Below, one piece after another: positions 5,606-63,070 of a DNA stretch of 64,000 nucleotides. The stretch covers positions 186,001-250,000 of IMG/VR virus record IMGVR_UViG_3300023049_000005, one strand, 5' to 3'. The stretch's first letter is position 1; every line of letters starts with the position of its first letter. A program made the translations under genes and the position numbers. The notes beneath the pieces are model-generated. The model saw nothing but the letters and a program-made list of their open reading frames with translations, did no database searches and was not told the DNA's origin.

Positions 5606-5631
5606 AAACATTTTTTAATCTTTTAATATAA
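5606..5631 (+). promoter_or_regulatory. Candidate phage middle-type promoter AAAC-N17-TATAA
   Basis: AAAC 5606-5609, 17 nt, TATAA 5627-5631 just before ATG 5637; same geometry recurs at 14734, 34426, 41640(-), 58340. Confidence 0.5.
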
Positions 5632-5636
5632 CTTCC

Positions 5637-6446
5637 ATGAATGACGAAATAAAGTTTATACTTAAATCCAACAAAATACCCTTACTGAAGTCAGTGATCA
5701 ATAGCTTAGTTAAAATCGAAAAGAAATTCAAGTTTCGATTCGAAGATGATAAGCTATTGATTTATTGTTCAGAAAAAGTAGGTAATCAAACCGTAGCATT
5801 AAAGATCTATTATTTTATGATAGAAGATTTTTTCAACCTCTTATTAGAAGATGATGATTTAGAAGATGAGTTCACTGCTGAGGACGAAAAAGAAGATGAT
5901 AAATTCATGTTGAACTTTAATATAGGTGATGGTAAGATATTAAATAAAAAACTAAACTTCTTCACCGAGGAAAAACATATTAAAGGTATATTTAAAACTA
6001 GACCCATAGACGGAGAAGACTATGTTAGAAAAGTTAATATGACTGATAGTAGATTTAAAATGTCATTAACAGGAATAGAAAAGGGTGAGATATCAGACGT
6101 ATCAGTTGAAACCATGAATTCTCTCACTAATACTAATAATGCCGATTTTAAATTAGAGATACCTGTTTCGACTTTCGAAGAAGCAAAAAAAGTATCAGCT
6201 ATTGATAAAGAAGATGTGATCACCTTAGAAGTAAGAGGTGGTGGTATTTATTTCAAACAAGCAGAATGGGAATTGAAAGTGGGGCAGACAGATGTGAAAG
6301 AAAACAGAAAATTTTCATTTAAGAAGAACTACTTAAAGAGTGTTAACACCACTACGGATATAGTTGAAGTATTCGCATTCGAAACATACTTACTTTTCAA
6401 AAATGAAAATGAGTTTTTTATATTAAGTTACGAAAAGACTTATTAA
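5637..6446 (+). CDS. Probable DNA polymerase sliding clamp (gp45/PCNA-like)
   Basis: Acidic 269-aa protein with two-domain helix/strand pattern typical of clamps; T4-like replication context; no diagnostic motif. Confidence 0.55.
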   Translation: MNDEIKFILKSNKIPLLKSVINSLVKIEKKFKFRFEDDKLLIYCSEKVGNQTVALKIYYFMIEDFFNLLLEDDDLEDEFTAEDEKEDDKFMLNFNIGDGKILNKKLNFFTEEKHIKGIFKTRPIDGEDYVRKVNMTDSRFKMSLTGIEKGEISDVSVETMNSLTNTNNADFKLEIPVSTFEEAKKVSAIDKEDVITLEVRGGGIYFKQAEWELKVGQTDVKENRKFSFKKNYLKSVNTTTDIVEVFAFETYLLFKNENEFFILSYEKTY

Positions 6447-6490
6447 TATTCTTTACTTAAATCGTATCTATATAAAATAATATATAAGAT

Positions 6491-6811
6491 ATGAGAAGAC
6501 CTGAGATAAGAATAATACAACCACAACAAGAAGAAGTAACTGATCAGAGGAATCTATCAGAAGAAGAAACAAAGGCGTTTTTATATAAACATCACCCTGA
6601 GATGTATAAAAAAATGTACCCTGAACAAACAGTTCCTAAGAAAAGGGAAGCTCCTAAACAACCATTACCGCCACAAAAAAGGGAAGGTCAAGACATCCAA
6701 AAGAGTGATAATACTTATATCTATAACAAATACGGTGATGCTAAAATAGATGACCAAACAAATTTCGGTTATAATATTGAGATAAAAACTGATATGAAAT
6801 TCAAACGATAG
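6491..6811 (+). CDS. Hypothetical protein (late-type motif upstream)
   Basis: TAATATATA at 6478-6486 directly upstream. Confidence 0.65.
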   Translation: MRRPEIRIIQPQQEEVTDQRNLSEEETKAFLYKHHPEMYKKMYPEQTVPKKREAPKQPLPPQKREGQDIQKSDNTYIYNKYGDAKIDDQTNFGYNIEIKTDMKFKR

Positions 6812-6835
6812 AATAATTTTCCTTAATTTTACAAT

Positions 6836-7564
6836 ATGGGAACAAATAATTTTTCTATTGATTTGAAATTGTGGAATAGGTTTAAACAAATAGAACCTAC
6901 TTTCGAAAAAGGTGTATACTATAATAATGTACTTACTTGGGGCTTAAAAGGTTTCAGCAGCACTGAAATAGAAGATTTATCACATTATTTATTCATTCTA
7001 TCTAGGTTAACCACAGAAGAAGACTTAGAGAATAGTGGGTTAAATATCATCAGAACGTATTATTACTTATTTCACACTTCTTATTTCGATAAAGAAATAT
7101 TTAAAGGTGATGAATTTATTTCCCTTGGGTATAAAAGACCATTTGGTAATAGTTACATACAAGGTGATATAGCAGCATGTATAGATCCACAATATATGGA
7201 ATACTTGAAAGAACAGGGCATGGATATTACATATGACGATACAGAAGGAGGCGACCACTATTTAATAGAATCTCCATATCGAGAGGGTGATGAAATAAAA
7301 TATCTACAAATAGATAGTTCTAAATTAAACATAGACTTTATTATAAAAGAATATAACAAGGTGTTGATGGAGATTATACAAAAAGTTGACTTCAAATACC
7401 ATCAGTTTGAATCAACTGATTTACATACTTTTAAAAACCTCTCTAATAACGGAAAACTTTCAGATATTCAAGTTAATAATTCTGTTAATTTAGAATTTAC
7501 AGAAGTTATATTCCCATCTAGGGCATATTTAAGAGAAGAATTTATAGACAACGTTTTAAAATAA
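6836..7564 (+). CDS. Hypothetical protein with C-terminal R[DE]xxIxxVL tag
   Basis: Ends LREEFIDNVLK; YKRPFGNS motif. Confidence 0.75.
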   Translation: MGTNNFSIDLKLWNRFKQIEPTFEKGVYYNNVLTWGLKGFSSTEIEDLSHYLFILSRLTTEEDLENSGLNIIRTYYYLFHTSYFDKEIFKGDEFISLGYKRPFGNSYIQGDIAACIDPQYMEYLKEQGMDITYDDTEGGDHYLIESPYREGDEIKYLQIDSSKLNIDFIIKEYNKVLMEIIQKVDFKYHQFESTDLHTFKNLSNNGKLSDIQVNNSVNLEFTEVIFPSRAYLREEFIDNVLK

Positions 7565-7569
7565 ATGAC

Positions 7570-9069: not shown

Positions 9070-9313
9070 TTTAATTGGGAAAAAATTCATACCAAAGAAA
9101 ACTTTTTCGTTGGATAACACTATATTCTATAGTGATATATTGTATGAATTAGTAGATTACGAGGAAGGAGAGGTTTATAATCTATATTTCTTTAAAACCG
9201 AAACAGAGAAATGTATATTCGCAGAACAAAGACCTGATTGGTTTTTTGTGGATTACTTTTCGACAGTAGACCAAAACAGAGTAAAACTAATTAATACAAT
9301 ATTATACACATAA
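9053..9313 (+). CDS. Hypothetical protein with C-terminal tag variant
   Basis: Ends NRVKLINTILYT. Confidence 0.65.
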   Translation: MNYMDNLIGKKFIPKKTFSLDNTIFYSDILYELVDYEEGEVYNLYFFKTETEKCIFAEQRPDWFFVDYFSTVDQNRVKLINTILYT

Positions 9314-14701: not shown

Positions 14702-14709
14702 CAAATATA
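14702..14709 (-). promoter_or_regulatory. Bacteroidota-type -7 promoter element TATATTTG
   Basis: TAnnTTTG 5 nt upstream of ATG 14697. Confidence 0.55.
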
Positions 14710-14733: not shown

Positions 14734-14759
14734 AAACTTTATAATATATATGAATATAA
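14734..14759 (+). promoter_or_regulatory. Candidate middle-type promoter AAAC-N17-TATAA
   Basis: Exact 17-nt spacing upstream of PPIase gene. Confidence 0.5.
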
Positions 14760-14780: not shown

Positions 14781-15233
14781 ATGAGTTATAAAGTACAAGA
14801 AGGCGATGTAGTTACAGTACACTACGTTGGATCATTAGACGATGGAAGCGAATTTGATAATAGTTATCAAACTCAAAACCCACTAACTTTTACAGTCGGT
14901 GAAAAAAAATTAATACCAGGTTTTGAAAATGCGGTATTAGAGAGAGAAAAAGGTGAAGAAGTTACCGTAAAGATTCCTAAAGAGGAAGCATATGGTGAAT
15001 ATTCTGAAAAAAATATACACGAGATTCCTAACGAGCAAATCAGTTTACCTGAGAATGCATCAGCAGGGGCGAGTATTGAAGGAACTGCTCCAAACGGAGA
15101 AAGATTTATTTGTAAAATAGTTTCAGTCAATGAATCAACTGTTACATTAGATCTTAATAGCCCATTAGCAGGTAAAGACCTAAGCTTTAAAATCGAAATC
15201 GTTGATGTTAAAGAAAAAGAAAGTGCTGAGTAA
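14781..15233 (+). CDS. FKBP-type peptidyl-prolyl isomerase (SlyD/FkpB-like)
   Basis: VTVHYVG.L.DG.EFDNS, LIPGFE, EEAYG, DLNSPLAGKDL.F. Confidence 0.92.
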   Translation: MSYKVQEGDVVTVHYVGSLDDGSEFDNSYQTQNPLTFTVGEKKLIPGFENAVLEREKGEEVTVKIPKEEAYGEYSEKNIHEIPNEQISLPENASAGASIEGTAPNGERFICKIVSVNESTVTLDLNSPLAGKDLSFKIEIVDVKEKESAE

Positions 15234-19692: not shown

Positions 19693-19701
19693 TAATATAT
19701 A
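19693..19701 (+). promoter_or_regulatory. Candidate late promoter TAATATATA
   Basis: Upstream of tail-fibre-like gene; a divergent copy at 19646-19654 serves the - strand gene. Confidence 0.55.
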
Positions 19702-22281: not shown

Positions 22282-22291
22282 TATATAGTAC

Positions 22292-34405: not shown

Positions 34406-34467
34406 AACTTTTTAAGTATATATTAAAACATATTTAAATATTATAATATAATAAAAAAAGTTTTACT

Positions 34468-35538
34468 ATGCTTAAAAATAATGAAAGAAAAATAAGAGTA
34501 GAATATATTTGGTTAGACGGTGGTACTCCACAGAAAATACGATCTAAGACCAAGGTTATGACAACTACTACTGACGATCTAATGACTATTGAATTATCTG
34601 ATTGGAATTATGACGGATCTTCAACGAAACAAGCTGTAACCAATAATTCAGAAGTTGTAATTAAACCAAAAACAAGATTTAAAGATCCCTTCGGTGGTGA
34701 CCTTTTAGTAATGTGTGATACATACAGCCCTGATGGTACACCACTTGGTGACAACAAGCGATACGAATTAGAGAAAATAATTGATATGGATCAAGAAACA
34801 TGGTATGGTTTCGAACAAGAATATACTATGATGAACCCAACTTCGGGTAAGCCATTAGGTTTCCCTAATACAGAAGGATATTTCCCTGAGCCACAAGGAA
34901 ATTATTACTGCGGAGTAGGCTATAATCATGTTAAAAATGGTAGAGAGATAGCTATGGAACATTTAGATAAATGTATAGAAGCGGGTATTAATATCAGTGG
35001 TGTCAATGCAGAAGTCATGCTAGGACAATGGGAGTATCAGGTCGGTCCTGTCCCTGCATTAGAGGGGGCAGATTCGATGTGGATGTCTAGATATATCCTT
35101 TATAGAATCGGAGAGAAATATAGTGTAGAAATGAATATCGAACCAAAACCCGTTAAAGGCGATAATTGGAACGGCTCAGGTATGCATGTTAATTTCTCTA
35201 CAGGTGCTATGAGAGATAAGAAAAACATCGAAAGTGGTGAAAGTATCAAAATTATAGAAAGAGCCTGTGAGAAACTTTCTACGAAACATTCAGAACACAT
35301 ATCAGTGTACGGTGAGGGTAATGAAGAAAGACTTACAGGAATCAACGAGACTTCTTCTTATAAAGACTTTTCTTGGGCATATGGTAGTAGAGAAGTATCT
35401 ATTAGAATACCAACTGCTGTTAAAGAAAGAAAGGTGGGATATTTAGAAGATAGAAGACCATCATCTAACGGTGATCCTTATTTAATTTGTAGAAAGTTAA
35501 TCCAAACTATCTGCAGCGAGAAAGAAGCGTATGCATAA
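34468..35538 (+). CDS. glnII: Glutamine synthetase type II
   Basis: EYIWLDG, RSKT, WNYDGSST.QA, GFEQEY, QGNYYCGVG, NAEVMLGQWEYQVG, WNGSGMHVNFS, RLTG..ET, SIRIP, YLEDRRPSSN.DPY; AAAC-N17-TATAAT at 34426-34452. Confidence 0.95.
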   Translation: MLKNNERKIRVEYIWLDGGTPQKIRSKTKVMTTTTDDLMTIELSDWNYDGSSTKQAVTNNSEVVIKPKTRFKDPFGGDLLVMCDTYSPDGTPLGDNKRYELEKIIDMDQETWYGFEQEYTMMNPTSGKPLGFPNTEGYFPEPQGNYYCGVGYNHVKNGREIAMEHLDKCIEAGINISGVNAEVMLGQWEYQVGPVPALEGADSMWMSRYILYRIGEKYSVEMNIEPKPVKGDNWNGSGMHVNFSTGAMRDKKNIESGESIKIIERACEKLSTKHSEHISVYGEGNEERLTGINETSSYKDFSWAYGSREVSIRIPTAVKERKVGYLEDRRPSSNGDPYLICRKLIQTICSEKEAYA

Positions 35539-35592: not shown

Positions 35593-35606
35593 GTTATATT
35601 TGTATT

Positions 35607-36855: not shown

Positions 36856-36873
36856 CAAATATACGTATATTTG
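36856..36873. promoter_or_regulatory. Perfect 18-bp palindrome CAAATATACGTATATTTG = back-to-back TATATTTG -7 elements
   Basis: Lies between divergent genes 36851(-) and 36891(+). Confidence 0.65.
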
Positions 36874-38432: not shown

Positions 38433-38474
38433 TAAGTCTCTAAACTTTTTCATAGTTCTAGACTATATCTAGTA

Positions 38475-40748: not shown

Positions 40749-40778
40749 ATACTATATATTAAAGTTATATTTTTATAT

Positions 40779-41606
40779 CTATCCCCAATAAGATCCACCC
40801 TCTGCCATGTGTGCTTTATCGTGCTTTTCTTCTGCTTTAGGATACACCCAATGTTCGTTATATAGTTTAGAAATTATACCATGTCCGTCCCATCTCTTTC
40901 CTTTTATACCAAAAAGAATTTGTACACCACCGCCTATATAAATGGCACTTTTATTCAGTTCTGTCTTAATAAAATTAACAAGTGGTAGCCCATATGCACC
41001 ACACCCCACTAAAGCGATATCAAAGTCATATTTACTAATATCGTCCTTCATTATGTTGAGTGATTCGATCCAATCCGAGTGAGGTCCTTCACCACCGATG
41101 CTCTGTACGCTTTGGTAACACATTAGATCAAACTCAGGTAATATTTTTTTATTCTGAAACAGGTTTTCTCTTTTCTTATATTGTTCTTCGATACTTTTCT
41201 TAAAAGGGTGTATAATAAGAACTTTCTTTCCTTTTAATTCTTCTGACCAAGGATTATCAAAATAAAATGGTTCGAGACTTCTATTATGTACCCTAATACT
41301 GTTAGGAGAATATTTATCAAATAAATGAGTCTGTGCTTTATTTATAAGCGGGTTATTCCATTCTATTTGTATATCAGCACAAGCTATACCTTTGGTGTAT
41401 TCTTTATGGAATTGTGGTACACAATCTCCATAGAACCCCGCAACTATTCTATTCATGTGATCTACATTGGGTGTTATAGGTTGACCTATATCTGTTAAAT
41501 ATGCGGTTAATGTTTCACCGCCTATACCGACTCTAGATACAGCGAATGGATCGCCTTGTTCTATGAGTTCTTTTATTTTATCGTTTCCTTCTTGTTCATT
41601 TAGCAT
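40779..41606 (-). CDS. GT-D-fold/DUF1792-like putative glycosyltransferase
   Basis: VSRVG..E, LEPFY..NPWS..LKGKKVLIIHPF, FDIALVGCGAYG, GGGVQILFGIKGKRWD, EGGSYW. Confidence 0.65.
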   Translation of the reverse strand: MLNEQEGNDKIKELIEQGDPFAVSRVGIGGETLTAYLTDIGQPITPNVDHMNRIVAGFYGDCVPQFHKEYTKGIACADIQIEWNNPLINKAQTHLFDKYSPNSIRVHNRSLEPFYFDNPWSEELKGKKVLIIHPFKKSIEEQYKKRENLFQNKKILPEFDLMCYQSVQSIGGEGPHSDWIESLNIMKDDISKYDFDIALVGCGAYGLPLVNFIKTELNKSAIYIGGGVQILFGIKGKRWDGHGIISKLYNEHWVYPKAEEKHDKAHMAEGGSYWG

Positions 41607-41643
41607 AATAAAAATTATATCAAAAAAGTAAAAAAAGTTTATA

Positions 41644-42292: not shown

Positions 42293-43132
42293 ATGATTAC
42301 AGTAAAGGTATTAACTGCAGACGAATTCCGTGAGATAACTAAAGAGAAAGATAGAATAAGATATTTCGATTATGCTGATCTATCTAGGAAAAAGAAAAAA
42401 CACTTCATTACTCTTTTAGATAATAATAAAATAATAGGTGTTTGTCATATAGCAGAGTTTGAATATGATACTGATTCGGATATGTCTATTGTTTATTTTT
42501 CGATAGATCCTGAATATAGAGGAAAGGGATATACTACTTTAATGGCTGATAAGTTAATGGAACTTTGCAAAAAAGAAAATATTGTATTGGGAACATCTTC
42601 TTGGACAGTGCCTGGTTTTAACAGACTGAGATCTACTATACAAAAATATGCAAATAAACATAGAGTTAAATTTGTAGATAATAATGAGTTGTTTGATAGA
42701 CCTTGGATGTATAATTCTAAAATGAAACACACACGAGATATGACCGAAGAAGAAAAGAAAGAATATGAGAAGTTAAGGAAACTTAAATACGTAAAATCAT
42801 TTAATATTTTTGATTATAATACAGGATTGTATAAGATATATGCTACACAAACAGATTTCGATTTCAATAAAGTAGATTATTTCTATGATATAATAGATAA
42901 AGGAGAATATAGGTTCTTTTCTAATGAAGGGAAGATAGCGGGTTATTTTGTTAACAACAAGTATTATATTTCAGAAGGACACCACAGAATGTTAGCTGCG
43001 TTAAAATATTGGAAGAAACATAATGATTATTCGGTTGTAGATAAACTGATCAAGAATGGTCTTATCACACCAAAAGATAAAGTGCCTAATAACTTCTATA
43101 AAAAATTTCCTATTAAGAAGCTTTTTTCATAA
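42293..43132 (+). CDS. GNAT acetyltransferase fused to ParB/Srx-like domain
   Basis: SIDPEYRGKGY acetyl-CoA loop; YYISEGHHRMLAA; internal CTS-like LKYVKSFNIF at the junction. Confidence 0.7.
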   Translation: MITVKVLTADEFREITKEKDRIRYFDYADLSRKKKKHFITLLDNNKIIGVCHIAEFEYDTDSDMSIVYFSIDPEYRGKGYTTLMADKLMELCKKENIVLGTSSWTVPGFNRLRSTIQKYANKHRVKFVDNNELFDRPWMYNSKMKHTRDMTEEEKKEYEKLRKLKYVKSFNIFDYNTGLYKIYATQTDFDFNKVDYFYDIIDKGEYRFFSNEGKIAGYFVNNKYYISEGHHRMLAALKYWKKHNDYSVVDKLIKNGLITPKDKVPNNFYKKFPIKKLFS

Positions 43133-43160
43133 TACAAATATAAGAAATAATATATAAGGT

Positions 43161-44069: not shown

Positions 44070-44114
44070 ATCGTTTTAGTTTGTTTTACAAATATAATAA
44101 TAAATATATAGAGT

Positions 44115-47799: not shown

Positions 47800-47844
47800 T
47801 TGACATACTTACTTATTTAATATATAATTAAAATCGGATATTAA

Positions 47845-53800: not shown

Positions 53801-56800
53801 CCAATGCTCTTTCTAATAATTCAGGTTTATTGACAAACACATCAGTTCTTTCTAGTCCTGTTAGAGAAAATATACTTGTTGAATATTTCAACGAAGATAA
53901 ATATAATAGAAGAATTAATAAAAGACCCATATTCGATAAAATGATATGGGTAAACGGTATATTTAATAACGCAGACGGAGAATTTAATGAAAGTGTTTGG
54001 CTTAGTGGTACTATGAAAAACGGTACATTTAGAAATTCTATGTTCAACCCATATGTACAAAGATGGGATTTCGAAACAGGTGATTTAAATAATATAGAAT
54101 TTAAATTTGACTTAGATACTGAGAACACTATATGGGAGAACGGAACATTTGATAGTGGTATATTCTTTTTCTCTGATTGGGAGAACGGAACATTCGAAAA
54201 TGGTGTAATGATGGGTGGTAACTTTAAGGCAGGTAGAGCTAATTATATGTCTGCATATTCTTCTATTTGGGAAGGTGGTAGATTTAGAAATGGTAATTGG
54301 TTCGGGTCTAACTTTACGTTTGATAATATTTACAACGATCCATCTATACCCAATCCTTTTGAGTACTTACGTAATTATTTTGCTAATGTTCAATTTGCTC
54401 CTTTCGTAACAGATATTTTAGGTAATAATAGTAAGAGATTACAGGATGATAGATTACATATATGGAATATAATAGAAGGTGATATTACTAATAGTGTTTA
54501 TAATATAACAGGTCATAGTTTTGGTACTGATAGTGGATCACAAATAATCAATAACGGAACAGTAGATGTGAATAACACATACAGCTTTACTGATATATCA
54601 ACTAGCCCCGCATCGGGTATATATAGATTGGAATTAAGTATATCACAAACACCAATTGTTTTCTCTACATATGACTATATTGTGAATTTCACATTAGTTG
54701 ACCAAAAGAGATATGATGAAGGGGTGTACGAAATTACTTTTTATACCGATGGTAATATTTGGAGTCCTATTCCAATAGTAAACAGCACGGTGTTTGAATT
54801 ATATGCTGATATATACGAAAACGGTATATTAATCGAACCTGATGTATTACTAAAACAAATCCCAATAGGTAGTTATAAGAATGTTAGGAAAACCTTTGAG
54901 GTATTAGAAAATCAAGAATATGTACTTAAAATAGAAGCCCGAATGAGTGTAGATAATGGTACTTACACGGAGAGTTATTACTTAGCAATAGAAGAAGTAG
55001 TGGCTGAGGTTGTTTACTCAAATAAAAATAATGATCTAGAAGGGTCAATAGAATTAAATTGGGAAGGTTCATACTTAAATTCTACTGCTTCGACTGCTAG
55101 TGCTTCATTAACTTATACAAATACATTAAGTTTAGAAGATACTATTCGTTATACAGGTTTAGATGTATCTACTATAAGTATACCTACTGTATATAAAGAT
55201 TATTCAAGTGCGTATTCTCAATTTGGAAACGGTACTTTCCAATCAGGTATATTTGAAAACGGAATATGGAACAACGGATATAGGGGAACAGAATACGGTC
55301 TTTATATAATAGAAGACGGTGATGTTTATCCTGGGGCGACATTAAGTTATGTTCATTTGGGTGGTTCTTCGTCTATAGTAGAAACTAATCCATTATATAG
55401 CGATGTCCCTCAAGTTAAATATAGAACAGAACCAATTGTGTATTTTAACAGAGTACAAAGAAGCTTTAAAGTAGGAAGAAGAAGATGGAGATTCGTTTTA
55501 GAAAGTGCTTTTGATATTGATGCTGCTAATAATACAGAAGAATATAATAGATTAAGAGTAAGTGATCAAGTGTCTATTTCTAATATAATAGCAATAGATA
55601 TTAATGGTAATAGAAAATTAATTAAAGATGTATTTAGAATAATTAGAATACCAAGTAGAACTAGAATAGTAGTAGAGTATCAAGAAACTTTCCCTATCGA
55701 TAGTATCCAAATAGATAGCGATAGACACTTAATTGCGGTTAGTAAAAACGTATGGTTTAATGGTGCTTTCTTAAATGGGTATTTTAAAGGTAATATGATA
55801 AACGGATTTGTTAGAGGAAATAGAAATATCACCAAGATAGAAGACTCTCAATTAATAGACGTTGACTTCCAAGGTGGGCATTTTGTGAGTAAGAAATACA
55901 CACTTAGTAGTATATTCGATACAAGAACATCCAATTCGTTAAGTTTATCTCCACAATTCACAGAGAAATATAATAGCTTATATCATAGTGGATTAATACA
56001 AAATATGACATTCGATGATGATGTTACTTTAACCAATTATGGGTTATATTCCACAGAAGGAGTAAAAATAAACGGAAATGGGATTGGTGATCCTAAGAAT
56101 GTAACTTTTGGTGCTACGGCAGTTTCGGAAGCACTTCAATATATCTATAATAGTGACATGGATCTAGTGTATGAACCTGAATATTATAGTAGTGTATTTA
56201 ACCAAAATATTATCAATACACATGCTATAAACGAATTGGAAATTGGTGAGTTCATCCCCACTAAACTATATAACATACCTGCGGGTTATATTACTTATGA
56301 TGTATTAAATAGTGTATCTAATTTTAAATATTCGACTGAGCCAAATAACATTGAGGGGGTAATAGAATATAAATTAAGTTTAGGATCTAAATATAAAATA
56401 TTTAATGATTTATTTAATGTTGATTTTTCACAAAGTCCAAATAATGATCCTGATATAGATGCACCATCTACTTTTAATATAGTGGAATCAGCAACATATG
56501 GTATATTCAGACAAGGATCTATATCTAATGGTATCAATTTTAACCAACTAGAATCACAATTTATACACGAAGACTTTATGTATATATTTGATACTAGTAG
56601 TAATGTTACAGAAAAAATAACAGGGAACAATACGTTTAAACTTAGAAATAGATATCACTTAGTAGAAGTAGATGTAGAATTTACTAATAAAACAGTACCC
56701 AATCCTTATGTTATAACTAATACCGTTACTATAGGCACTACATATAGTTATGGTACATTCTCACTACCTAAATTAAGTATAGGGCAAGCCTATAACGAAT

Positions 56801-57417
56801 ATTTTGAAAATATTAATTTAGGTGGAACAAGTGGTTATATATCATCTTATGATAATGATATGGTCGGATTTATTGATGGGACAAAATTAAGTGAGATAAA
56901 TAATTTTGGAAATATTGGTGATACTAAACGATTAACCATGAAGTCATTTATGTATAATAACTTTGGTGGGTATAGAGATTCAGTGAGAGTTATAGAAAAG
57001 GGCTTTAATGTTGATATAGGTTCAACCAGTAGCGAATATACAGTTAATTCTCCAATTTATTATAAATTTAATCATTATGAGATAGATAAAATTCCTTTTT
57101 ATGATTATAGAAGTTATATTGATCCATTAAGTGGTGAGGTAACAGATTGGAATATGTTAGCAAACCAAGATCAAACTAGAAAAATAGATGATAGGATTAA
57201 AACACCTTTCTATGCTTCTTCTGTTCCTATTAATTATCAAGACTCTAATTTTGTATTAACTGATAATATAAATTTCTTAGGTGGTTCTAATATAACAGGT
57301 AATGTGATTATTGAAGAAGTAGATACATTATCAACAGCTACTATACAAGAATTATTAGATTTACTTGCTGCTAATAAACAATTTAATTTTGGTGGTGGTG
57401 GTCCTCAATCATTATAA
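47845..57417 (+). CDS. Giant 3190-aa structural protein with G-x-[FW]-x-[ND] pentapeptide beta-helix repeats
   Basis: Blocks of W.NG.F.NG.F repeats; N/S/T/G-rich; TAATATATA at 47818-47826. Confidence 0.75.
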   Translation: MSNSIQETYSSALVNYSEPRTINGVHYTRFYTEFNTELSVGDFVYILNGNYDNTDLLNINEYQQGTTGYEVLEIDRNSITLDILYRDEDPWNEDPFADYTKVYLVDNIQKFNYENIDNSFGFEGQSGDKYSIFNNNVFLSQIEDMEYTQETGTNQRFFKSFFDPERTLGMVDMRGQLFNDSTELKFDLEELTEYSLVEPNGASGSTYARFSSGQNNIRDFDIVTQVDYSTDEIIERLISLNSSNSATNTVNLWTLNKNTLDGIGDVTLRNSLNTEDVSANIVSPFIKKDGLGAFSGSLIDIRLPKYSGSTYNYISSQSGGAILGNTSRTYTLRDINQTVIVGYDDPTFENNYRAFGFYNSSDLLSDKFISPDSQDDSWTIANGQGYIDGNTQSTPYFALSSGLTGSYNYTGDFVFPQRQIGGFRVYGNIVPPYAEYSGIGRAVQIETNTWNNSVEDSTHHELVFAGTGLTSSVDPLQGGAYFYSYGGVWRDYDSIYNGNKMLGNAFELSKTTFDEYKTGSWSQSSFNPFGDFDDYPFADLKDIKFLGYEKKDFGLNIYYDSAGTPVNTFSALTFALPTFGGIGGGETFALPSEFESNGVYYSRYLVITESGTSYIINLLFNSVLLAVNTDFLTDMQNGLPQVHVVIQEIDTDLSQPTEIGVQRNLNVFDFPELIGGDYPIVSIYGTHSYYDPISGTFSGFDFSDINISTIDFSDQRWLIGSSELSPRLSNSSLLSTDANQGVYVFDRSINDTTYEFSITTTTEFDTGDTLPSNKIYKILGEVINNKRRVWVATNTGLFMFDYDLAYTFDYYFRVNFDDNEIELDESLYKNDRLYVMEEFTYDGRLFEKDKIYRHLKDEKRWVRDTTYERSYLTKAHMKDGTILEGVFNDGIFGNKNTVANWEGATWRNGIVYNVDWDSGTMSSKSDIILRQNYYATLDNSKVKISTDFTNNEGYGYNLVNFSTLKTGDVLNGTILNTTIGLTVSSRLLDDTYNGLSFSYNDLEIVRSKIENSTTNAIQLGNSMVSRSDLNSTFVNDAQLINNNVYDSIINDATIENQGNIKILGYEKWFNIRTKTEQQDILQIHKFFINEKDFSKLSYEDWVVFNNVQLSNNNPSNILDRLFYVLGGADGYYQDVYEDLNRIFNNKYRENNFKIFISKRLETQNRQRTNIRYNGVQLVVDTAENESPMYSIDLNIVTNEIPYNSDSSIYLNALENDGILKVNATNISKAVLQNYHFKNSWINGGTWLNGSMIQPDQLNSLYNYGSVSSTTNSVTVDLYDNNYEIKSSDILDNEVVHINNIWDSNFLTYSGGDFMIVSGTTSRVLEPYGDFATNATLSVPMSQYTTLNLNRIDGVNNNLSIVSGVFKNQSFSNLSIQNEELDVRNLNYQNIRNLMVINSEITKRDNLEIQDIFLGYGHVSNDFTSKEEFGLDLISYKQTLTNVNVFDGIVTKSAFISGTFSDGIFTNNRYRDINDLIPINNRTYAPTQSAVISSWHFGNFLNGEVSDSTWLNGTFSNGIFLNSEFLGGIWSNGEFGDISGRPTLNLFRKGLWLNGAFNNGIFGDDDKEVGTINSIYTNNKYILESNIYTKEGTNIWEKGNFNNGVLTSINNNVTIWRDGKFNNGKVSGSVIWYDGIFNNGKYSSRYGRQVANVAGEVDLLSLADSSLADGSRTLNLNGITASFPFLDQYSIASIRDINANNPNLFDNAGTIVLDTSDNQLKFGYVSSTTSNTVLDPFDTNLSSHGFTEKAADDFFTGTISNLYMQFKPLDYEAIGTSVHPLKNANILGAKIFVQDTSNEYIYDGSSYVTQSNFLSATISGTSLTFSSYYSWRNGVFNNGEFGLADNPNNINPSWENGTFNGGVFNGKVWKNGTFVKGKFNGSGTNQLQTSSTNIFKGYDPQASIEEYIDDYSLSFIAAQNQGQGSYKVILDKYDWYGVWLNGEVSPNISGLSVVLSNLESAVSNVTPNLSFGLESAFAPSATNTSVSNALSNNSGLLTNTSVLSSPVRENILVEYFNEDKYNRRINKRPIFDKMIWVNGIFNNADGEFNESVWLSGTMKNGTFRNSMFNPYVQRWDFETGDLNNIEFKFDLDTENTIWENGTFDSGIFFFSDWENGTFENGVMMGGNFKAGRANYMSAYSSIWEGGRFRNGNWFGSNFTFDNIYNDPSIPNPFEYLRNYFANVQFAPFVTDILGNNSKRLQDDRLHIWNIIEGDITNSVYNITGHSFGTDSGSQIINNGTVDVNNTYSFTDISTSPASGIYRLELSISQTPIVFSTYDYIVNFTLVDQKRYDEGVYEITFYTDGNIWSPIPIVNSTVFELYADIYENGILIEPDVLLKQIPIGSYKNVRKTFEVLENQEYVLKIEARMSVDNGTYTESYYLAIEEVVAEVVYSNKNNDLEGSIELNWEGSYLNSTASTASASLTYTNTLSLEDTIRYTGLDVSTISIPTVYKDYSSAYSQFGNGTFQSGIFENGIWNNGYRGTEYGLYIIEDGDVYPGATLSYVHLGGSSSIVETNPLYSDVPQVKYRTEPIVYFNRVQRSFKVGRRRWRFVLESAFDIDAANNTEEYNRLRVSDQVSISNIIAIDINGNRKLIKDVFRIIRIPSRTRIVVEYQETFPIDSIQIDSDRHLIAVSKNVWFNGAFLNGYFKGNMINGFVRGNRNITKIEDSQLIDVDFQGGHFVSKKYTLSSIFDTRTSNSLSLSPQFTEKYNSLYHSGLIQNMTFDDDVTLTNYGLYSTEGVKINGNGIGDPKNVTFGATAVSEALQYIYNSDMDLVYEPEYYSSVFNQNIINTHAINELEIGEFIPTKLYNIPAGYITYDVLNSVSNFKYSTEPNNIEGVIEYKLSLGSKYKIFNDLFNVDFSQSPNNDPDIDAPSTFNIVESATYGIFRQGSISNGINFNQLESQFIHEDFMYIFDTSSNVTEKITGNNTFKLRNRYHLVEVDVEFTNKTVPNPYVITNTVTIGTTYSYGTFSLPKLSIGQAYNEYFENINLGGTSGYISSYDNDMVGFIDGTKLSEINNFGNIGDTKRLTMKSFMYNNFGGYRDSVRVIEKGFNVDIGSTSSEYTVNSPIYYKFNHYEIDKIPFYDYRSYIDPLSGEVTDWNMLANQDQTRKIDDRIKTPFYASSVPINYQDSNFVLTDNINFLGGSNITGNVIIEEVDTLSTATIQELLDLLAANKQFNFGGGGPQSL

Positions 57418-57475: not shown

Positions 57476-58210
57476 CTATTGTTTGATAAACTGTTTCGTC
57501 AATGTCTTTCCATCTTTGTTCAACATTAATATATAATTACCTCTAGTTAAAGAAGTAACATCGATTCTGTTGTTATTTAAATTACCTTGTTTAACCATAC
57601 TACCATTGATATTAAATACACTAAAGGTAGCGTTAGAAACATCATTACTAACATTCAAATAGTCAGTAGTTGGATTAGGATAAATTGTAAAAGAAAGTGA
57701 TTCTTTCTCAAAGCTATTATCATTAATACCTGTAGTAATACTACTTACAAAAATAGTATCTACTGTGTGTATAATATCAACATCAACTTGATATCTACCT
57801 GCAAAAACAGTATTACTAATATTAAAATCTAATACATCACCTGATTTTAATATTAAACTATCTTTAACTACATTAAATAGAGACATATTATTACCACTAG
57901 TGATGGTCGTAGAATTTGTATCAATAGTGAAATTATAACCGCCTCTTATATGGGTTAAGGAAAAACTCACTTTATATGAGTTATAAGTAGTAGGTATAGT
58001 TTCACTATACAGTGTAACTGCAGCCCTCATGTTCTGAACTCCACTATTATAAGCATATAGTGTATCAACTTTAGAGCTATCTTGTGTATAGTTATTGATG
58101 TTTGTATCATTAACTACCATTTGATTTGATACATCGAAAAACACAGTATCCTGAGCGTTCAATGTCGTTGCAAATAATGCAACTATTAAGATTGAGATTA
58201 ACTTTTTCAT
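57476..58210 (-). CDS. Secreted protein with T9SS type A C-terminal sorting domain
   Basis: Sec signal MKKLISILIVALFATTLNA/Q; C-terminal IYPNPTTDYLNV...FNINGSMVKQG...IDVTSL.RGNYIL......TKQFIKQ. Confidence 0.88.
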   Translation of the reverse strand: MKKLISILIVALFATTLNAQDTVFFDVSNQMVVNDTNINNYTQDSSKVDTLYAYNSGVQNMRAAVTLYSETIPTTYNSYKVSFSLTHIRGGYNFTIDTNSTTITSGNNMSLFNVVKDSLILKSGDVLDFNISNTVFAGRYQVDVDIIHTVDTIFVSSITTGINDNSFEKESLSFTIYPNPTTDYLNVSNDVSNATFSVFNINGSMVKQGNLNNNRIDVTSLTRGNYILMLNKDGKTLTKQFIKQ

Positions 58211-58245: not shown

Positions 58246-58253
58246 CAAATATA
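58246..58253 (-). promoter_or_regulatory. Bacteroidota-type promoter TTG-N19-TATATTTG
   Basis: Upstream of T9SS cargo gene; second TATATTTG at 58329-58336(-). Confidence 0.6.
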
Positions 58254-58370
58254 CGAATACTTTTTAAATAAACAAGCTTTTCTGTAAAAAAAATTATTCT
58301 TATATTAAATCCTTGTTTTAGTTCAGCACAAATATAAGAAAACTTTTATATACAATCAACTATAATTAAT

Positions 58371-58757
58371 ATGATATTATTTAATGAAGAATACGACTTA
58401 GAAAAAAAGAAGTCATTAATAAAAGAACATAACCAAAGGTATTATAATGCAGTTTATATAGACATACCTGATTATGTTATAAGTAAAATATTCTTTTTAA
58501 CTAATACTATAAATATCAATAATAAGGGTGTAGATAACGTAACTATGTATTCTATATCAGAATTAACAGAGGAATTTTTAAAAGATAAGATCATTTTTTT
58601 CAATAAATTAACACTTGAGCCATTTAATTATCATATAAATAATGATCCTGTTGTATTACATGGTAATATTTATAATAGAAGTCAATATATGGATTTACCC
58701 ATTTATCAAAAATATTTAGTAGAGAAGAGAGAACTTTATATTAAAGATTGTCTTTAA
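58371..58757 (+). CDS. Hypothetical protein with C-terminal tag variant
   Basis: Ends KRELYIKDCL; AAAC-N17-TATAAT at 58340-58366. Confidence 0.65.
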   Translation: MILFNEEYDLEKKKSLIKEHNQRYYNAVYIDIPDYVISKIFFLTNTININNKGVDNVTMYSISELTEEFLKDKIIFFNKLTLEPFNYHINNDPVVLHGNIYNRSQYMDLPIYQKYLVEKRELYIKDCL

Positions 58758-59759: not shown

Positions 59760-59769
59760 TTAAAGTAAT

Positions 59770-61464: not shown

Positions 61465-61505
61465 TAATTTATATATAAATTAATGTTTAGTTTGTCTGAT
61501 AAACA

Positions 61506-62288
61506 TTAAATAAAAACCATATTCCCGTTCTTATAATGAACAAATTCTTTACCTAACATCTCAGCCCATTCTTCCTTAGTGGCAGTCTGTTTTCCAAAGA
61601 CTGTTGTGTTATCTGCACACCACTCACATAGGTCTTCTAAATTATCAAACACAGGGGATTTAGGAGAACCCTCACTTGTTGTTTCCCATAATTGAAATCC
61701 TTCACCCTTTGGTGGATCAGTTGATTCCCATTCTTCGTATAAGTTTTTAGATTCTTCACTATCCCATACTACACCTTCACCATCACAAATTTCACATAGT
61801 CCATATACTCCAATGTCCTTAGCTCTCGCCTTCACACAAATATGCATATTAATACCATCATGTCCCATTCCTTCTCTGTTCCATTTATTTACTTCATCAG
61901 GCGTAGGTATATATCCATTGTTATAAGGAAGCCAACTGTTACCACCGTTTTTTACCTTTTCTTCTACCTCTTTCTTTTGTTCCTCATTTAAAGGAACTCT
62001 TGTGAAGTCCATTAACCTACCTGATTCTAATAGAGCATTAATTTCAACTTCCGTGATATTATTAGAATGTGCTAATTTATTATACCTTCTACCATTACCA
62101 AGATATTCCCAATCTTGTTCATCGAATGAATACCATTCTTCTGATATCTTTTTAGTTTCTTTATTATATCCCGATTGGTCACAAGATATACAATCCACGG
62201 CTGTATATAGTGGATTTAAATATCCTTTCCATTTTTTACCTAATTCCCAATCGAAATCCATTGGTACTCTTTTTAATTCTCTACCCAT
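61506..62288 (-). CDS. Hypothetical phage protein with split CxxC zinc finger
   Basis: Start reassigned to MGRELKRVP (ATG 62288); CISCDQSG, CEICDGEG, GEGFQLWETTSEGSP.SPVF. Confidence 0.7.
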   Translation of the reverse strand: MGRELKRVPMDFDWELGKKWKGYLNPLYTAVDCISCDQSGYNKETKKISEEWYSFDEQDWEYLGNGRRYNKLAHSNNITEVEINALLESGRLMDFTRVPLNEEQKKEVEEKVKNGGNSWLPYNNGYIPTPDEVNKWNREGMGHDGINMHICVKARAKDIGVYGLCEICDGEGVVWDSEESKNLYEEWESTDPPKGEGFQLWETTSEGSPKSPVFDNLEDLCEWCADNTTVFGKQTATKEEWAEMLGKEFVHYKNGNMVFI

Positions 62289-62289
62289 T

Positions 62290-62739
62290 TTAGTTGTGTT
62301 TAATATCTCTTTCTGCTTGTCGATCAATGTCTTTACTTTTAATAGAATCTTTCTTATCATATAATTTCTTACCCTTACCAACCCCAATTTCTAATTTAGC
62401 CCAATTGTTAACGATCAGTAATTTAATAGGAATTAATGAATATCCTTTTTCTTCTATTTTTTTAGTTATCTTCTTAATCTCTTGTTTAGTAAGTAATAGT
62501 TTCCTCTCTCTTGTTTCATCGTGTTTTTCACCAAACTTATACTCTTTGATATACATATTCTTAACATATATTTCCCCGTCATTAATTATACAGAAAGACT
62601 CTTTGATAGAGCATGATCCTTCCCTAACACTTTTTATTTCAGTACCTAATATTCTAAGACCTGCAACAAAAGTTTCCCCTATCTCATAATTGAAATAAGC
62701 TTTCTTATTGTTTACTATTGTTTCTATTTTCTTTGACAT
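62290..62739 (-). CDS. smpB: SsrA-binding protein SmpB
   Basis: NKKAYFNYEI, AGL.I.GTEIKSVR, RERKLLL.KQEI, LIPIK, AKLEIGVGKGKKLYDKK; start reassigned to ATG 62739. Confidence 0.93.
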   Translation of the reverse strand: MSKKIETIVNNKKAYFNYEIGETFVAGLRILGTEIKSVREGSCSIKESFCIINDGEIYVKNMYIKEYKFGEKHDETRERKLLLTKQEIKKITKKIEEKGYSLIPIKLLIVNNWAKLEIGVGKGKKLYDKKDSIKSKDIDRQAERDIKHN

Positions 62740-62749
62740 ATTAATATAG

Positions 62750-63070
62750 TTAAATGCTATCAATAAGTTTATCTCTGAGTTCAGCTTTAATTAAGTTTAC
62801 TATTTTTTCTTTATTTCTTCTATATAAGTAAACAGTAATAGTTTCTAATTTGAAATCATTCAGATCTAATTTTTCTAAATCTAATATGATATAACGCAAA
62901 AATCCATCAGGTGATACTCTCCTTTCATGATAAGCATTACCCTTTAATAAAGATCTATCTTGATATAATAATTTCTTCATTAGTTTTTCATTACCAATAG
63001 AATTACCTTCCTTGTCTTTTAATATACTAGGATTATTTAGTAAATCTCTTATTACTATAAAGTCGCTCAT
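62750..63070 (-). CDS. Hypothetical protein with C-terminal RD tag; paralog of next gene
   Basis: FIVIRDLLNNPSILK...; ends ELRDKLIDSI. Confidence 0.75.
   Translation of the reverse strand: MSDFIVIRDLLNNPSILKDKEGNSIGNEKLMKKLLYQDRSLLKGNAYHERRVSPDGFLRYIILDLEKLDLNDFKLETITVYLYRRNKEKIVNLIKAELRDKLIDSI

What the first reader, a model, noticed from the sequence alone, without database searches (positions are those of the whole stretch)
5606..62770. Candidate phage-specific middle promoter AAAC-N17/18-TATA[AT] ahead of replication and metabolism genes
Seen directly: AAAC, exactly 17 nt, then TATAA occurs before the clamp (5606), PPIase (14734), glnII (34426), GT-D (41640-) and 58371 (58340) genes. An 18-nt spacing with TATAT occurs before YkuK (4895), DNA polymerase (38442) and smpB (62770-). 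The fixed -35/-10-like geometry differs from the Bacteroidota TTTG/TAnnTTTG consensus. Inference: it is read by a phage-encoded sigma factor or activator encoded outside this window.
Basis: partly seen in the sequence, partly recalled or inferred. Interest (0 to 1): 0.6.

Follow-up and report, generated by a model that had tools for sequence, protein, structure and literature searches.

The report
Phage sigma-factor promoter for replication genes
A two-part promoter signal (AAAC, 17-18 bases, TATAA) sits in front of the replication, nucleotide-metabolism, tRNA and regulator genes of an uncultured 270-kb lake phage. It is most likely read by an ECF-type sigma factor that the phage itself encodes, giving a three-step early/middle/late gene programme.

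Summary
Across the 270,756-bp phage contig, AAAC-Nx-TATAA with the TATAA in non-coding DNA occurs 20 times at x=17 and 15 times at x=18, against 0-4 at every other spacing. Dinucleotide shuffles of the intergenic DNA give 4.3±2.0 against 32 observed. Eighty-six percent of sites point at a gene start within 100 nt, and three more precede tRNA genes.

Of the N18/TATAT sites, the DNA polymerase site is plausible, smpB is weak, and YkuK is not supported.

Downstream genes are replication, recombination, nucleotide-metabolism, translation and regulator genes. Two other promoter classes exist:
- Host-type (Bacteroidota) TAnnTTTG.
- A very common -10-only TTTAATATATA before capsid, sheath and baseplate genes (late).

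The genome, outside the window, encodes one ECF-type sigma factor and a T4 gp55-like late sigma. No RNA polymerase, MotA or credible AsiA was found. The motif's -35 (AAACTT) matches the ECF hallmark. It precedes the sigma gene itself in seven relatives and the gp55-like gene in three of four.

Best reading: middle promoters read by host core polymerase plus the phage ECF sigma. No RNA data exist, so start sites, timing and the sigma-promoter pairing remain inferred.

The parts
5606..5631 (+). M3 promoter (AAAC-N17-TATAA), 5 nt before the ATG of gene 5637-6446
   Evidence: exact match; 18.7 bits, -35 TTTAAACATTTT, -10 TAATATAACTT, non-coding, pointing at the gene.
5637..6446 (+). 269-aa gene driven by the 5606 promoter.
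   Evidence: No Pfam, PHROG or PDB sequence hit.
14734..14759 (+). M3 promoter (N17), 21 nt before gene 14781-15233
   Evidence: 19.4 bits.
14781..15233 (+). FKBP-type peptidyl-prolyl isomerase gene
   Evidence: PF00254, E=1e-22.
34426..34451 (+). M3 promoter (N17), 16 nt before gene 34468-35538
   Evidence: 19.3 bits.
34468..35538 (+). Glutamine-synthetase-like gene
   Evidence: PF00120 Gln-synt_C, E=2e-17.
41615..41640 (-). M3 promoter (N17), 8 nt before gene 40779-41606(-)
   Evidence: 20.3 bits, -35 TATAAACTTTTT, -10 TGATATAATTT.
40779..41606 (-). GT-D-fold glycosyltransferase-like gene
   Evidence: PF22882, E=9e-9.
58340..58365 (+). M3 promoter (N17), 5 nt before gene 58371-58757 (128 aa, function unknown)
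   Evidence: 17.1 bits.
2990..3016 (-).
   Evidence: 21.3 bits, -35 AGTAAACTTATT, -10 ATATATAAAAG.
38442..38468 (+). Probable M3 variant (AAAC-N18-TATATC), 6 nt before the polymerase half of a split family-B DNA polymerase (38475-39908)
   Evidence: 14.6 bits with a perfect -35 (TCTAAACTTTTT). The same TATATC -10 occurs at the late-sigma promoter of relative L036. Gene: PF00136.
62744..62770 (-). Weak M3-like site (AAAC-N18-TATAT), 4 nt before the ATG (62739) of smpB (62290-62739, minus strand)
   Evidence: 11.9 bits, which is in the false-positive zone. SmpB: PF01668, E=4e-51. The phage tmRNA gene elsewhere also has an M3-like site.
4895..4921 (+). Not supported as an M3 promoter.
   Evidence: Below 11 bits. 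Its -35 flank lacks the T-tract. The N18/TATAT pattern is not enriched.
1..1397 (+). 3' part of an SbcC/Rad50-like gene. Its M3 promoter lies about 300 nt before the window start (contig 185677-185703).
   Evidence: 16.2 bits. SMC_N / SbcC Walker B.
47819..47826 (+). Example of the separate late class M1 (TTTAATATATA), 18 nt before the 3190-aa ORF 47845-57417. Listed for contrast, not as part of M3.
   Evidence: M1 precedes head protease, major head, sheath and baseplate genes.
35595..35602 (+). Example of the separate host-type class (TATATTTG = TAnnTTTG), 4 nt before gene 35607-35990. Listed for contrast.

Best explanation
The motif, consensus (a/t)nTAAAC(T/A)TTtT - 9/10 nt - (t/c)nA-TATAA(t/g), is a bipartite -35/-10 promoter class of a T4-like jumbo phage of a Bacteroidota host. 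I call it M3.

Host core RNA polymerase, carrying the phage's own ECF-type sigma factor (286 aa, contig 68723-69583, 117 kb before the window), binds AAAC(TT) through sigma domain 4 and TATAA through domain 2. It starts transcription a few bases after the TATAA, often at or next to the ATG, which would give leaderless mRNA.

The proposed cascade:
- Early: the sigma gene is first transcribed by read-through from host-type TAnnTTTG promoters.
- Middle: the sigma then amplifies itself from its own M3 promoter and switches on replication, recombination, nucleotide-metabolism, tRNA/tmRNA and SmpB genes, plus the gp55-like late sigma gene.
- Late: the gp55-like sigma reads the -10-only TTTAATATATA promoters of structural genes.

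Shown here: the motif, its spacing, orientation, gene set and conservation, and the presence and fold class of the sigma. Inferred: that this sigma reads this motif, the timing, and the start sites.
For: Motif reality:
- Spacing- and word-specific enrichment.
- 41 of 47 matrix hits fall in the 8.5% of the genome that is non-coding.
- 30 of 35 exact sites point at an ORF start within 100 nt, against 53% of all intergenic TATAA (Fisher P=5e-5). Three of the other five precede tRNA genes.

Gene set: FolD, Dam methylase, UvsW, both halves of a split PolB, a DinG-like helicase, adenylosuccinate synthetase, gp32, IMPDH/GMP reductase, NADAR, RecA/UvsX-like, SbcC-like, FKBP, a GlnA-like protein, GT-D, SmpB, the ECF sigma and the gp55-like sigma. 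None is structural. The separate TTTAATATATA class precedes prohead protease, major head, tail sheath and baseplate hub genes.

The reader of the motif:
- One ECF-type sigma in the genome. Its best PDB sequence hit is SigW, E=3e-8.
- The AlphaFold model has pLDDT 83, and all top Foldseek hits are ECF sigmas: AlgU, sigmaE, SigW, SigL, SigH.
- No RNAP beta or beta', T7-type RNAP or MotA was found, and only a noise-level AsiA hit.
- The -35 AAACTT shares AACTT with the sigmaE consensus GGAACTT (PMC6648896).

Conservation:
- (A/C)AAC-TTT..-N17/18-TA(T/C)AA(T/G) stands before the sigma gene in G000 and in 7 relatives of 38-87% protein identity, while the spacer varies. Autoregulation is typical of ECF sigmas (general knowledge).
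- The motif also precedes the gp55-like gene in G000 and in 3 of 4 relatives, and the DinG-like helicase in 4 of 6.
- No terminator-like hairpin lies between the host-type promoters at contig 64135/64991 and the sigma gene.
Against: - No transcript data exist: only DNA metagenome runs hold the phage.
- The -10 TATAA(T/G) is unlike the GTC/CGT-type -10 of characterised ECF sigmas. It resembles the -10 of primary sigmas and overlaps in sequence with the late TAATATATAA element; 3-4 of the N18 sites could be late promoters with a chance AAAC.
- Sigma region 4 scores below Pfam's cut-off (18.1 against 25.7 bits). Its helix-turn-helix is interrupted by an 80-residue beta domain, so normal -35 reading is not assured.
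- The contig is about 89% complete; another factor could be encoded in the missing part.
- In relatives the pooled N17/18 peak is modest: 8+8 against about 3 per other spacing.
- Gene calls are home-made.
Confidence: 0.6

Rival explanations
1. Sigma appropriation or activator model. The TATAA is read by the host primary sigma (whose -7 element TAnnTTTG begins TAnnT). AAAC at about -30/-35 is the box of a phage DNA-binding activator that replaces the host -33 contact, as MotA/AsiA do at T4 middle promoters.
For: - The phage is T4-like in its core genes: gp32, UvsW, UvsX-like, gp46-like, gp55-like, gp23-like head, sheath.
- A fixed 17/18-nt distance is equally expected for an activator box.
- The -10 looks like a primary-sigma -10 rather than an ECF -10.
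Against: - No MotA C-terminal domain was found, and the only AsiA hit is at noise level (12.9 bits, E=0.025, similar to hits in unrelated control genomes).
- An ECF sigma with a matching AAC-type -35 preference is present and carries the motif on its own gene in 8 of 8 genomes of this phage group with sigma identity of 38% or more.
- Many phage ORFs are unannotated, so an unrecognised activator cannot be excluded.
Confidence: 0.12
2. The motif is read by a host alternative or ECF sigma factor (Bacteroidota carry many), which the phage exploits. The phage sigma would have another, smaller regulon.
For: - The AAC-type -35 is generic to ECF sigmas (PMC6648896).
- The host is Bacteroidota, judged from the TAnnTTTG promoters and a T9SS C-terminal sorting domain on a phage gene.
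Against: - About 45 sites drive the phage's essential replication genes, which would make infection depend on a stress sigma.
- The motif is conserved in front of the phage sigma gene itself across relatives, the classic signature of a sigma's own autoregulated promoter.
- No host genome is available to test this.
Confidence: 0.1
3. M3 is not a separate class but a strengthened subset of the late promoters. The gp55-like sigma reads (A)ATATAA, and the upstream AAAC/T-tract is an UP-like or enhancer element.
For: - The -10 of M3 (aATATAAt, or TATATAA at N18) resembles the late element TAATATATAA.
- Seven genes score for both classes.
Against: - The late motif as a class shows no conserved -35.
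- M3 genes are replication, metabolism and regulator genes, including the gp55-like gene itself. Late-motif genes are structural.
- A minimal gp55-type sigma has no domain 4 with which to read a -35 at a fixed distance (general knowledge of T4 gp55).
Confidence: 0.06
4. It is not a promoter. It could be a compositional artefact of AT-rich intergenic DNA, or a site for something else such as replication or packaging.
For: The intergenic DNA is about 75% A+T, and TATA-rich words are common.
Against: - Dinucleotide shuffles, all other spacings and permuted words give 4-6 against 32 observed.
- There is a strong orientation bias toward gene starts.
- The two blocks are conserved, with a variable spacer, in relatives.
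Confidence: 0.02

Closest known systems
ECF (group 4) sigma-dependent promoters, e.g. E. coli sigmaE (GGAACTT ... GTC) and B. subtilis SigW (TGAAAC-N16-CGTA)
   Same: - Bipartite promoter with a rigid spacer.
- The -35 is built on AAC followed by T's (AAACTT against GGAACTT; PMC6648896 for sigmaE, SigW consensus from my own knowledge).
- The sigma has only domains 2 and 4.
- The sigma's own gene carries the motif.
   Different: - The -10 is TATAA(T/G), not GTC/CGT.
- The sigma is phage-encoded.
- Its domain-4 helix-turn-helix carries an all-beta insertion of about 80 residues.
- No anti-sigma was identified.
- The regulon is a phage replication and metabolism programme, not an envelope-stress response.
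Phage phiEco32 gp36 (divergent sigma) with gp79, middle and late promoters
   Same: A phage-encoded sigma directs host core RNAP to post-early phage promoters; early genes use the host primary sigma (PMC12276001).
   Different: - phiEco32 promoters have a single conserved AATGTA element centred at -11.5, and one sigma serves both middle and late genes (PMC12276001).
- Here the middle class is bipartite, and a second, gp55-like sigma probably serves late genes.
- No gp79 homologue was sought.
Bacillus phage SPO1 sigma cascade (gp28 middle, gp33/34 late)
   Same: Sequential replacement of sigma gives early, middle and late classes, with bipartite middle promoters read by a phage sigma. The essentiality of gp28/gp34 is noted in PMC9429907; the promoter details are my own knowledge.
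   Different: The host phylum, sigma family and consensus sequences differ. Here the late step uses a T4 gp55-type minimal sigma instead.
T4 middle promoters (MotA box at -30 plus sigma70 -10, with AsiA)
   Same: - A T4-like gene set.
- The promoter class serves replication and nucleotide-metabolism genes and the late-sigma gene.
- A TAnnnT-like -10 combined with a phage-specific upstream element.
   Different: - The upstream element is AAAC(TT), not (a/t)(a/t)TGCTT(t/c)A.
- No MotA and no credible AsiA were found.
- An ECF sigma is present instead.
Group 2 (T4-like) jumbo phages with a 'minimal' and a 'more complete' sigma factor (Iyer et al. 2021, PMC7824862)
   Same: No phage RNAP. The genome has a gp23-type capsid, family-B polymerase and UvsW, plus both a minimal (gp55-like) sigma and a fuller sigma.
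   Different: That survey does not give the promoters read by the fuller sigma. Here a specific motif and regulon are proposed, and the fuller sigma is ECF-like rather than RpoD-like.

Membership tests
Sigma-70-family bipartite (-35/-10) promoter | Two conserved blocks at a fixed 16-18 bp spacing | tested here: met
   Only N17 and N18 are enriched (20 and 15 against 0-4). Block consensus.
Sigma-70-family bipartite (-35/-10) promoter | Located upstream of genes and oriented toward them | tested here: met
   30 of 35 sites are within 100 nt of a same-strand start, against a 53% background (P=5e-5). Three more precede tRNA genes.
Sigma-70-family bipartite (-35/-10) promoter | Transcription starts about 5-9 nt downstream of the -10 | not testable with these tools
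   No RNA run holds the phage. Indirect only: in 11 sites the ATG lies 3-8 nt after TATAA, so any start must fall within that gap.
ECF-sigma-dependent promoter | -35 element containing the AAC core | tested here: met
   AAAC is invariant by construction. In relatives the element is (A/C)AAC with a conserved TTT after it. sigmaE consensus GGAACTT: PMC6648896.
ECF-sigma-dependent promoter | -10 element of the GTC/CGT type | tested here: not met
   The -10 is TATAA(T/G). This lowers 'typical ECF promoter', not 'read by this ECF-like sigma'.
ECF-sigma-dependent promoter | The sigma gene is preceded by its own promoter (autoregulation) | tested here: met
   23.1-bit site 46 nt before the sigma gene, conserved in 7 relatives. 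Function is not shown.
ECF-sigma-dependent promoter | Cognate anti-sigma factor encoded next to the sigma | not tested
   Neighbours are a PRPP synthetase (upstream) and a conserved 588-aa protein with no family hit (downstream). No anti-sigma domain was searched for.
ECF (group 4) sigma factor protein (the 286-aa ORF) | Sigma domain 2 present | tested here: met
   PF04542: 44.5-47.4 bits against a cut-off of 24.
ECF (group 4) sigma factor protein (the 286-aa ORF) | Sigma domain 4 present; no domain 1.1 or 3 | tested here: inconclusive
   PF08281 scores 18.1 bits, below the 25.7 cut-off. The SigW alignment covers both halves of domain 4, split by residues about 171-254. The AF2 model has helices 122-173 and 256-285 plus a beta insert, and all top Foldseek hits are ECF sigmas.
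T4-type middle promoter (MotA/AsiA sigma appropriation) | MotA and AsiA encoded by the phage; MotA box TGCTT at -30 | tested here: not met
   PF09158 gives no hit. PF09010 gives only 12.9 bits, E=0.025. The upstream block is AAAC(T)n.
Bacteroidota primary-sigma promoter (TTTG at -33, TAnnTTTG at -7) | TAnnTTTG element close to the start | tested here: not met
   M3 sites have TATAA without TTTG. TAnnTTTG forms its own class of 45 gene-proximal sites. Two tRNA-array promoters carry both elements.
T4-type late promoter (gp55, -10-only) | Single extended -10 element with no -35 requirement, before late structural genes | tested here: not met
   M3 has a -35 block and non-structural genes. The TTTAATATATA class meets this definition instead.

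The most novel reading that the evidence does not exclude
A lineage of uncultured T4-like jumbo phages of freshwater and marine Bacteroidota has replaced the MotA/AsiA middle-gene switch with its own autoregulated ECF-type sigma factor.

Features that set it apart:
- The sigma's -35-reading helix-turn-helix is split by a conserved 80-residue beta domain.
- It reads AAAC(TT)-N17/18-TATAA promoters, many of them giving leaderless mRNAs.
- Its regulon includes the phage tRNA arrays, tmRNA and SmpB, and the gp55-like late sigma.
- The three key genes (ECF sigma, late sigma, gp32) additionally share a conserved AUAGCA-repeat leader that may be a translational operator.

Together this would be a previously undescribed three-tier circuit.
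Probability: 0.45. Interest if true: 0.6.

Novelty: new variant of a known kind. Interest (0 to 1): 0.5.

Why it matters
Promoters of Bacteroidota phages are almost unmapped, and the host's unusual primary sigma makes standard promoter finders useless there.

A clean three-class promoter grammar lets every gene of this 270-kb genome, and of its relatives, be assigned a probable expression time from sequence alone:
- Host-type TAnnTTTG.
- Phage ECF-type AAAC-N17/18-TATAA.
- gp55-type TTTAATATATA.

It also shows a T4-like phage solving the early-to-middle switch with an ECF sigma rather than by sigma appropriation.

ECF sigma and promoter pairs are valued as orthogonal switches. A phage pair with an AT-rich -10 and an insertion in domain 4 would be a new, directly testable one.

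Tried and rejected
- Nucleotide search of 20 kb of the window against 50,697 phage records: no match. A protein search with the 852-aa ORF found only two uncultured megaphage records at about 40% identity over 20%. No named relative or published transcription map is available.
- Sequencing runs: 8 lake-water metagenome DNA studies hold the phage and none is RNA. I therefore did not use read laying, and start sites could not be examined.
- Single-protein search of IMG/VR with the sigma found only a second copy of the same phage. The alignment-based search gave few useful loci. Relatives came instead from the search for homologous proteins plus look-up of encoding contigs.
- The G000-trained weight matrix finds few sites in relatives, because their -35 is often CAAC and their -10 varies. 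Reading the upstream regions directly was more informative.
- The canonical E. coli-type TTGACA-N17-TATAAT scan is not enriched (26 against 34.8 expected). I rejected it as a description of any class here.
- The N18/TATAT pattern as a class is rejected as not enriched.
- The 43118-43143(+) site scores 18.2 bits but has AAGC instead of AAAC, and a late element sits 4 nt before the ATG. I left it out.
- Literature searches for a described Bacteroidota-phage late or ECF promoter found nothing specific.
- No alternative genetic code was needed.

Full report
**Context.** The window is bases 186001-250000 of a single 270,756-bp, 29.8% G+C IMG/VR virus contig (classed linear; CheckV completeness about 89%). 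It has no close relative among 50,697 deposited phage genomes. It occurs in lake-water metagenomes from 8 studies, with no RNA runs. Its gene content is T4-like:
- gp32, UvsW, a RecA/UvsX-like protein, an SbcC/gp46-like protein and a split family-B DNA polymerase.
- A gp23-type major head protein, prohead protease, tail sheath and baseplate hub.
- A gp55-like late sigma.

A phage gene carries a T9SS C-terminal sorting domain, and TAnnTTTG elements are abundant. Both point to a Bacteroidota host.

**Step 1: the observation.**
- In the window, AAAC-N17-TATAA occurs 12 times against 3.8±1.6 in shuffles.
- AAAC-N18-TATAT is not enriched (7 against 4.0).
- I called genes with a codon-usage-scored greedy ORF picker (310 genes, 91.5% coding) and moved to the whole contig.
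- With the TATAA in non-coding DNA, the count is 20 at N17, 15 at N18 and 0-4 at every other spacing from 8 to 27.
- A hypothesis-free scan of all 256 four-mers at 36 offsets upstream of the 366 intergenic TATAA ranks AAAC at N17 first (P about 1e-9) and AAAC at N18 fourth.
- Dinucleotide-preserving shuffles of the intergenic DNA give 4.3±2.0 (maximum 11 in 500) against 32 observed. Permuted or complementary words give 4-6.

**Step 2: anatomy.**
- Aligned sites show T before AAAC and a W/T tract after it (TAAAC[T/A]TTtT). The -10 is aATATAAt at N17 or TATATAA at N18.
- A two-block matrix finds 47 sites of at least 14 bits, 41 of them in the 8.5% of the genome that is non-coding.
- 30 of 35 exact intergenic sites point at a same-strand ORF start within 100 nt, against 53% for intergenic TATAA in general (P=5e-5).
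- Three of the remaining five precede tRNA genes: arrays at contig 72732-73762 and 162261-164003, and tRNA-Leu at 157959. A matrix hit sits 20 nt before the phage tmRNA.
- The distance from TATAA to the ATG has a sharp mode at 5 nt (11 sites at 3-8 nt) and a second group at 16-27 nt. The first mode implies leaderless or nearly leaderless mRNAs. The same geometry (an 8-mer, then 4 nt, then ATG) holds for the other two promoter classes.

**Three promoter classes.**
- M1, TTTAATATATA(A/G). There are 91 gene-proximal copies, 42 of them exactly 4 nt before the ATG, with no conserved -35. It precedes prohead protease, major head protein, tail sheath and baseplate hub genes. This is the analogue of the T4 late promoter.
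- H, TAnnTTTG (mostly TATATTTG). There are 45 gene-proximal copies. They precede mostly small or unannotated genes, plus an RNA ligase, an M28 peptidase and the T9SS-tagged protein. This is the host primary-sigma type.
Pfam-annotated M3 genes are FolD, Dam methylase, UvsW, the PolB exonuclease half (contig 53092) and polymerase half (window 38475), a DinG-like helicase, adenylosuccinate synthetase, gp32, IMPDH/GMP reductase, NADAR, RecA-like, SbcC-like, FKBP, GlnA-like, GT-D and SmpB, plus both sigma genes. None is structural.

**Step 3: who reads it.**
- Searches of the contig with Pfam models find no RNAP beta or beta', no T7-type RNAP, no MotA and only a noise-level AsiA hit. They find exactly two sigma-like genes.
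- The 286-aa ORF at contig 68723-69583 has Sigma70_r2 (44.5 bits) and a sub-threshold r4_2, and belongs to PHROG 1740. Its best PDB sequence match is the ECF sigma SigW (E=3e-8).
- An AlphaFold model built on 23 homologues has pLDDT 83. It shows domain 2 (residues 5-98), a disordered linker, and domain 4 (122-173 plus 256-285), with a confident all-beta insert (175-253) inside the helix-turn-helix turn.
- Every significant Foldseek PDB hit is an ECF sigma: AlgU, sigmaE, SigW, SigL, SigH.
- ECF sigmas read -35 elements built on AAC. For sigmaE the consensus is GGAACTT (PMC6648896), and M3 has AAACTT.
- The 122-aa ORF at contig 88183-88551 matches PHROG 234 'late sigma transcription factor' (E=3e-6). 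Its top, weak PDB hit is T4 gp55.
- A domain-2-plus-4 sigma fits a bipartite promoter. A minimal gp55-type sigma fits the -10-only M1.

**Conservation.**
- The sigma has homologues of 38-87% identity on contigs up to 451 kb from marine and freshwater metagenomes, in conserved synteny: helicase, PRPP synthetase, sigma, then a protein of about 600 aa.
- In G000 and seven relatives, the 60-110 nt before the sigma gene contain (A/C)AAC-TTT(T/A)T, a variable spacer, then TA(T/C)AA(T/G) at N17 or N18.
- The same motif stands before the gp55-like gene in G000 and in three of four relatives (81%, 73% and 64% identity). One of them has the TATATC -10 also seen at the window's polymerase site.
- Orthologous helicase, PolB-exonuclease and clamp-loader genes carry it in some relatives but not all.
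- Pooled over 140 kb of relatives, the AAC-Nx-TATAA profile in non-coding DNA peaks modestly at 17/18 (8+8 against about 3).

**Cascade model.**
- The sigma gene lies at the end of a plus-strand run of genes that begins with host-type promoters at contig 64135 and 64991. No terminator-like hairpin lies between them.
- The most economical model is that the host sigma makes the first sigma transcripts. The ECF sigma then amplifies itself and turns on M3 genes, including the gp55-like gene. The gp55-like sigma then turns on M1 genes.
- That M3 is 'middle' is inferred from its gene set and from its position upstream of the late sigma. It is not measured.

**Rivals.** These are listed with weights in the report sections: a MotA-like activator working with the host sigma; a host ECF sigma; M3 as an enhanced subset of late promoters; and artefact. 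The main weaknesses of the preferred model are the non-ECF-like -10, the sub-threshold and interrupted domain 4, and the total absence of transcript data.

**Comparison with known systems.**
- Sigma cascades in phages are established: SPO1 gp28 and gp33/34, T4 gp55, phiEco32 gp36 (PMC9429907, PMC12276001).
- T4-like jumbo phages with both a minimal and a fuller sigma have been noted (PMC7824862).
- What is new here is the concrete promoter grammar, the ECF type of the middle sigma in a T4-like Bacteroidota phage without MotA/AsiA, its domain-4 insertion, and a regulon that takes in tRNAs and tmRNA/SmpB.
- I rate this a new variant of a known kind.

**Verdict on individual sites.**

| Site | Gene | Score (bits) | Verdict |
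|---|---|---|---|
| 5606 | 5637-6446 ('clamp', unconfirmed) | 18.7 | Confirmed M3 |
| 14734 | FKBP PPIase | 19.4 | Confirmed M3 |
| 34426 | GlnA-like | 19.3 | Confirmed M3 |
| 41640(-) | GT-D-like | 20.3 | Confirmed M3 |
| 58340 | 58371-58757 | 17.1 | Confirmed M3 |
| 38442 | DNA polymerase half | 14.6 | Probable variant |
| 62770(-) | smpB | 11.9 | Weak |
| 4895 | YkuK | below 11 | Not supported |

**Limits.**
- Gene calls are home-made.
- Pfam may miss very divergent RNAPs or activators.
- The contig is incomplete.
- For relatives, only up to about 20 kb of any one record was fetched and examined.

Noticed in passing
Window, e.g. 47819-47826(+), 19694-19701(+), 44103-44110(+), 40753-40760(-), 22280-22287(+); genome-wide: The dominant upstream motif is TTTAATATATA(A/G). 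There are 91 gene-proximal copies, 42 of them exactly 4 nt before the ATG, with no conserved -35. It precedes prohead protease, major head, tail sheath and baseplate hub genes and the giant ORFs, so it is probably the gp55-type late promoter.
   Followed up: partly
Window 35595-35602(+), 36856-36863(-), 36866-36873(+), 14702-14709(-), 44089-44096(-), 58246-58253(-): Host-type Bacteroidota TAnnTTTG elements (mostly TATATTTG) form a third class: 45 gene-proximal copies, 13 of them exactly 4 nt before the ATG. These are presumed early promoters.
   Followed up: partly
Genome-wide; window examples 5627-5639 and 58361-58373: All three promoter classes often end 4-5 nt before the start codon. This implies many leaderless or near-leaderless mRNAs.
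   Followed up: no
Contig 68687-68715(+), 88107-88135(+), 81345-81310(-) = loci L007:14687, L008:16107, L008:9345: The only non-coding clusters of (A)TAGCA repeats in the genome are the 5' leaders of three M3-driven genes: the ECF sigma (3 copies), the gp55-like sigma (2 copies plus 2 near-copies) and gp32 (4 copies). The repeats are conserved in the sigma and late-sigma leaders of relatives. They may be a translational operator or protein-binding site.
   Followed up: partly
L009:15538-15913(-) (contig 105538-105913); window 62290-62739(-): The phage encodes a full-length tmRNA (Rfam 59.3 bits) and SmpB, both with M3-like sites upstream. ARAGORN's predicted tag (...GELVLAV) is atypical and unverified.
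   Followed up: partly
Contig 72545-72575(+) and 161947-161977(+) (L008:545, L012:17947): Two near-identical promoter regions, AATAAACTTTATTATATTTGCA..CTATAAG, combine the M3 -35/-10 with an embedded host-type TATATTTG. They lie 165-290 nt upstream of the two tRNA arrays, so the tRNAs may have dual early plus middle promoters.
   Followed up: no
Window 38475-39908(+) and contig 53092-54600(+): The family-B DNA polymerase is split into an exonuclease-domain gene and a polymerase-domain gene 170 kb apart, each with its own M3 promoter.
   Followed up: no
L007:14723-15583 (contig 68723-69583), residues 175-253: The ECF sigma carries a confidently modelled all-beta domain of about 80 residues inserted in the turn of the domain-4 helix-turn-helix. 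It is conserved across the 23 aligned homologues, and its fold was not identified.
   Followed up: partly
Window 57476-58210(-): A 244-aa phage protein has a type IX secretion C-terminal sorting domain (Por_Secre_tail, E=1e-13) behind a host-type promoter. This supports a Bacteroidota host and suggests a phage protein exported by the host T9SS.
   Followed up: no
Window 47845-57417(+); contig 165059-176905(+), 36587-44653(+), 133127-139447(-): There are four giant ORFs (3190, 3948, 2688 and 2106 aa). The 3190-aa one has no PHROG hit at E<=1e-5. The others were not searched.
   Followed up: no
Contig 101831-103453(+) and 121923-123647(+): Two paralogous 540/574-aa homing/HNH-endonuclease-like genes (PHROG 3339, E about 1e-120) sit directly after the major head and tail sheath genes. 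Each has both late and host-type promoter elements.
   Followed up: no
Contig 11056(-) and 80123(-): Two unrelated genes share the promoter start TTTAAACAAAAGTGT..., which suggests a duplicated promoter cassette.
   Followed up: no
The name rests on context only.
   Followed up: partly
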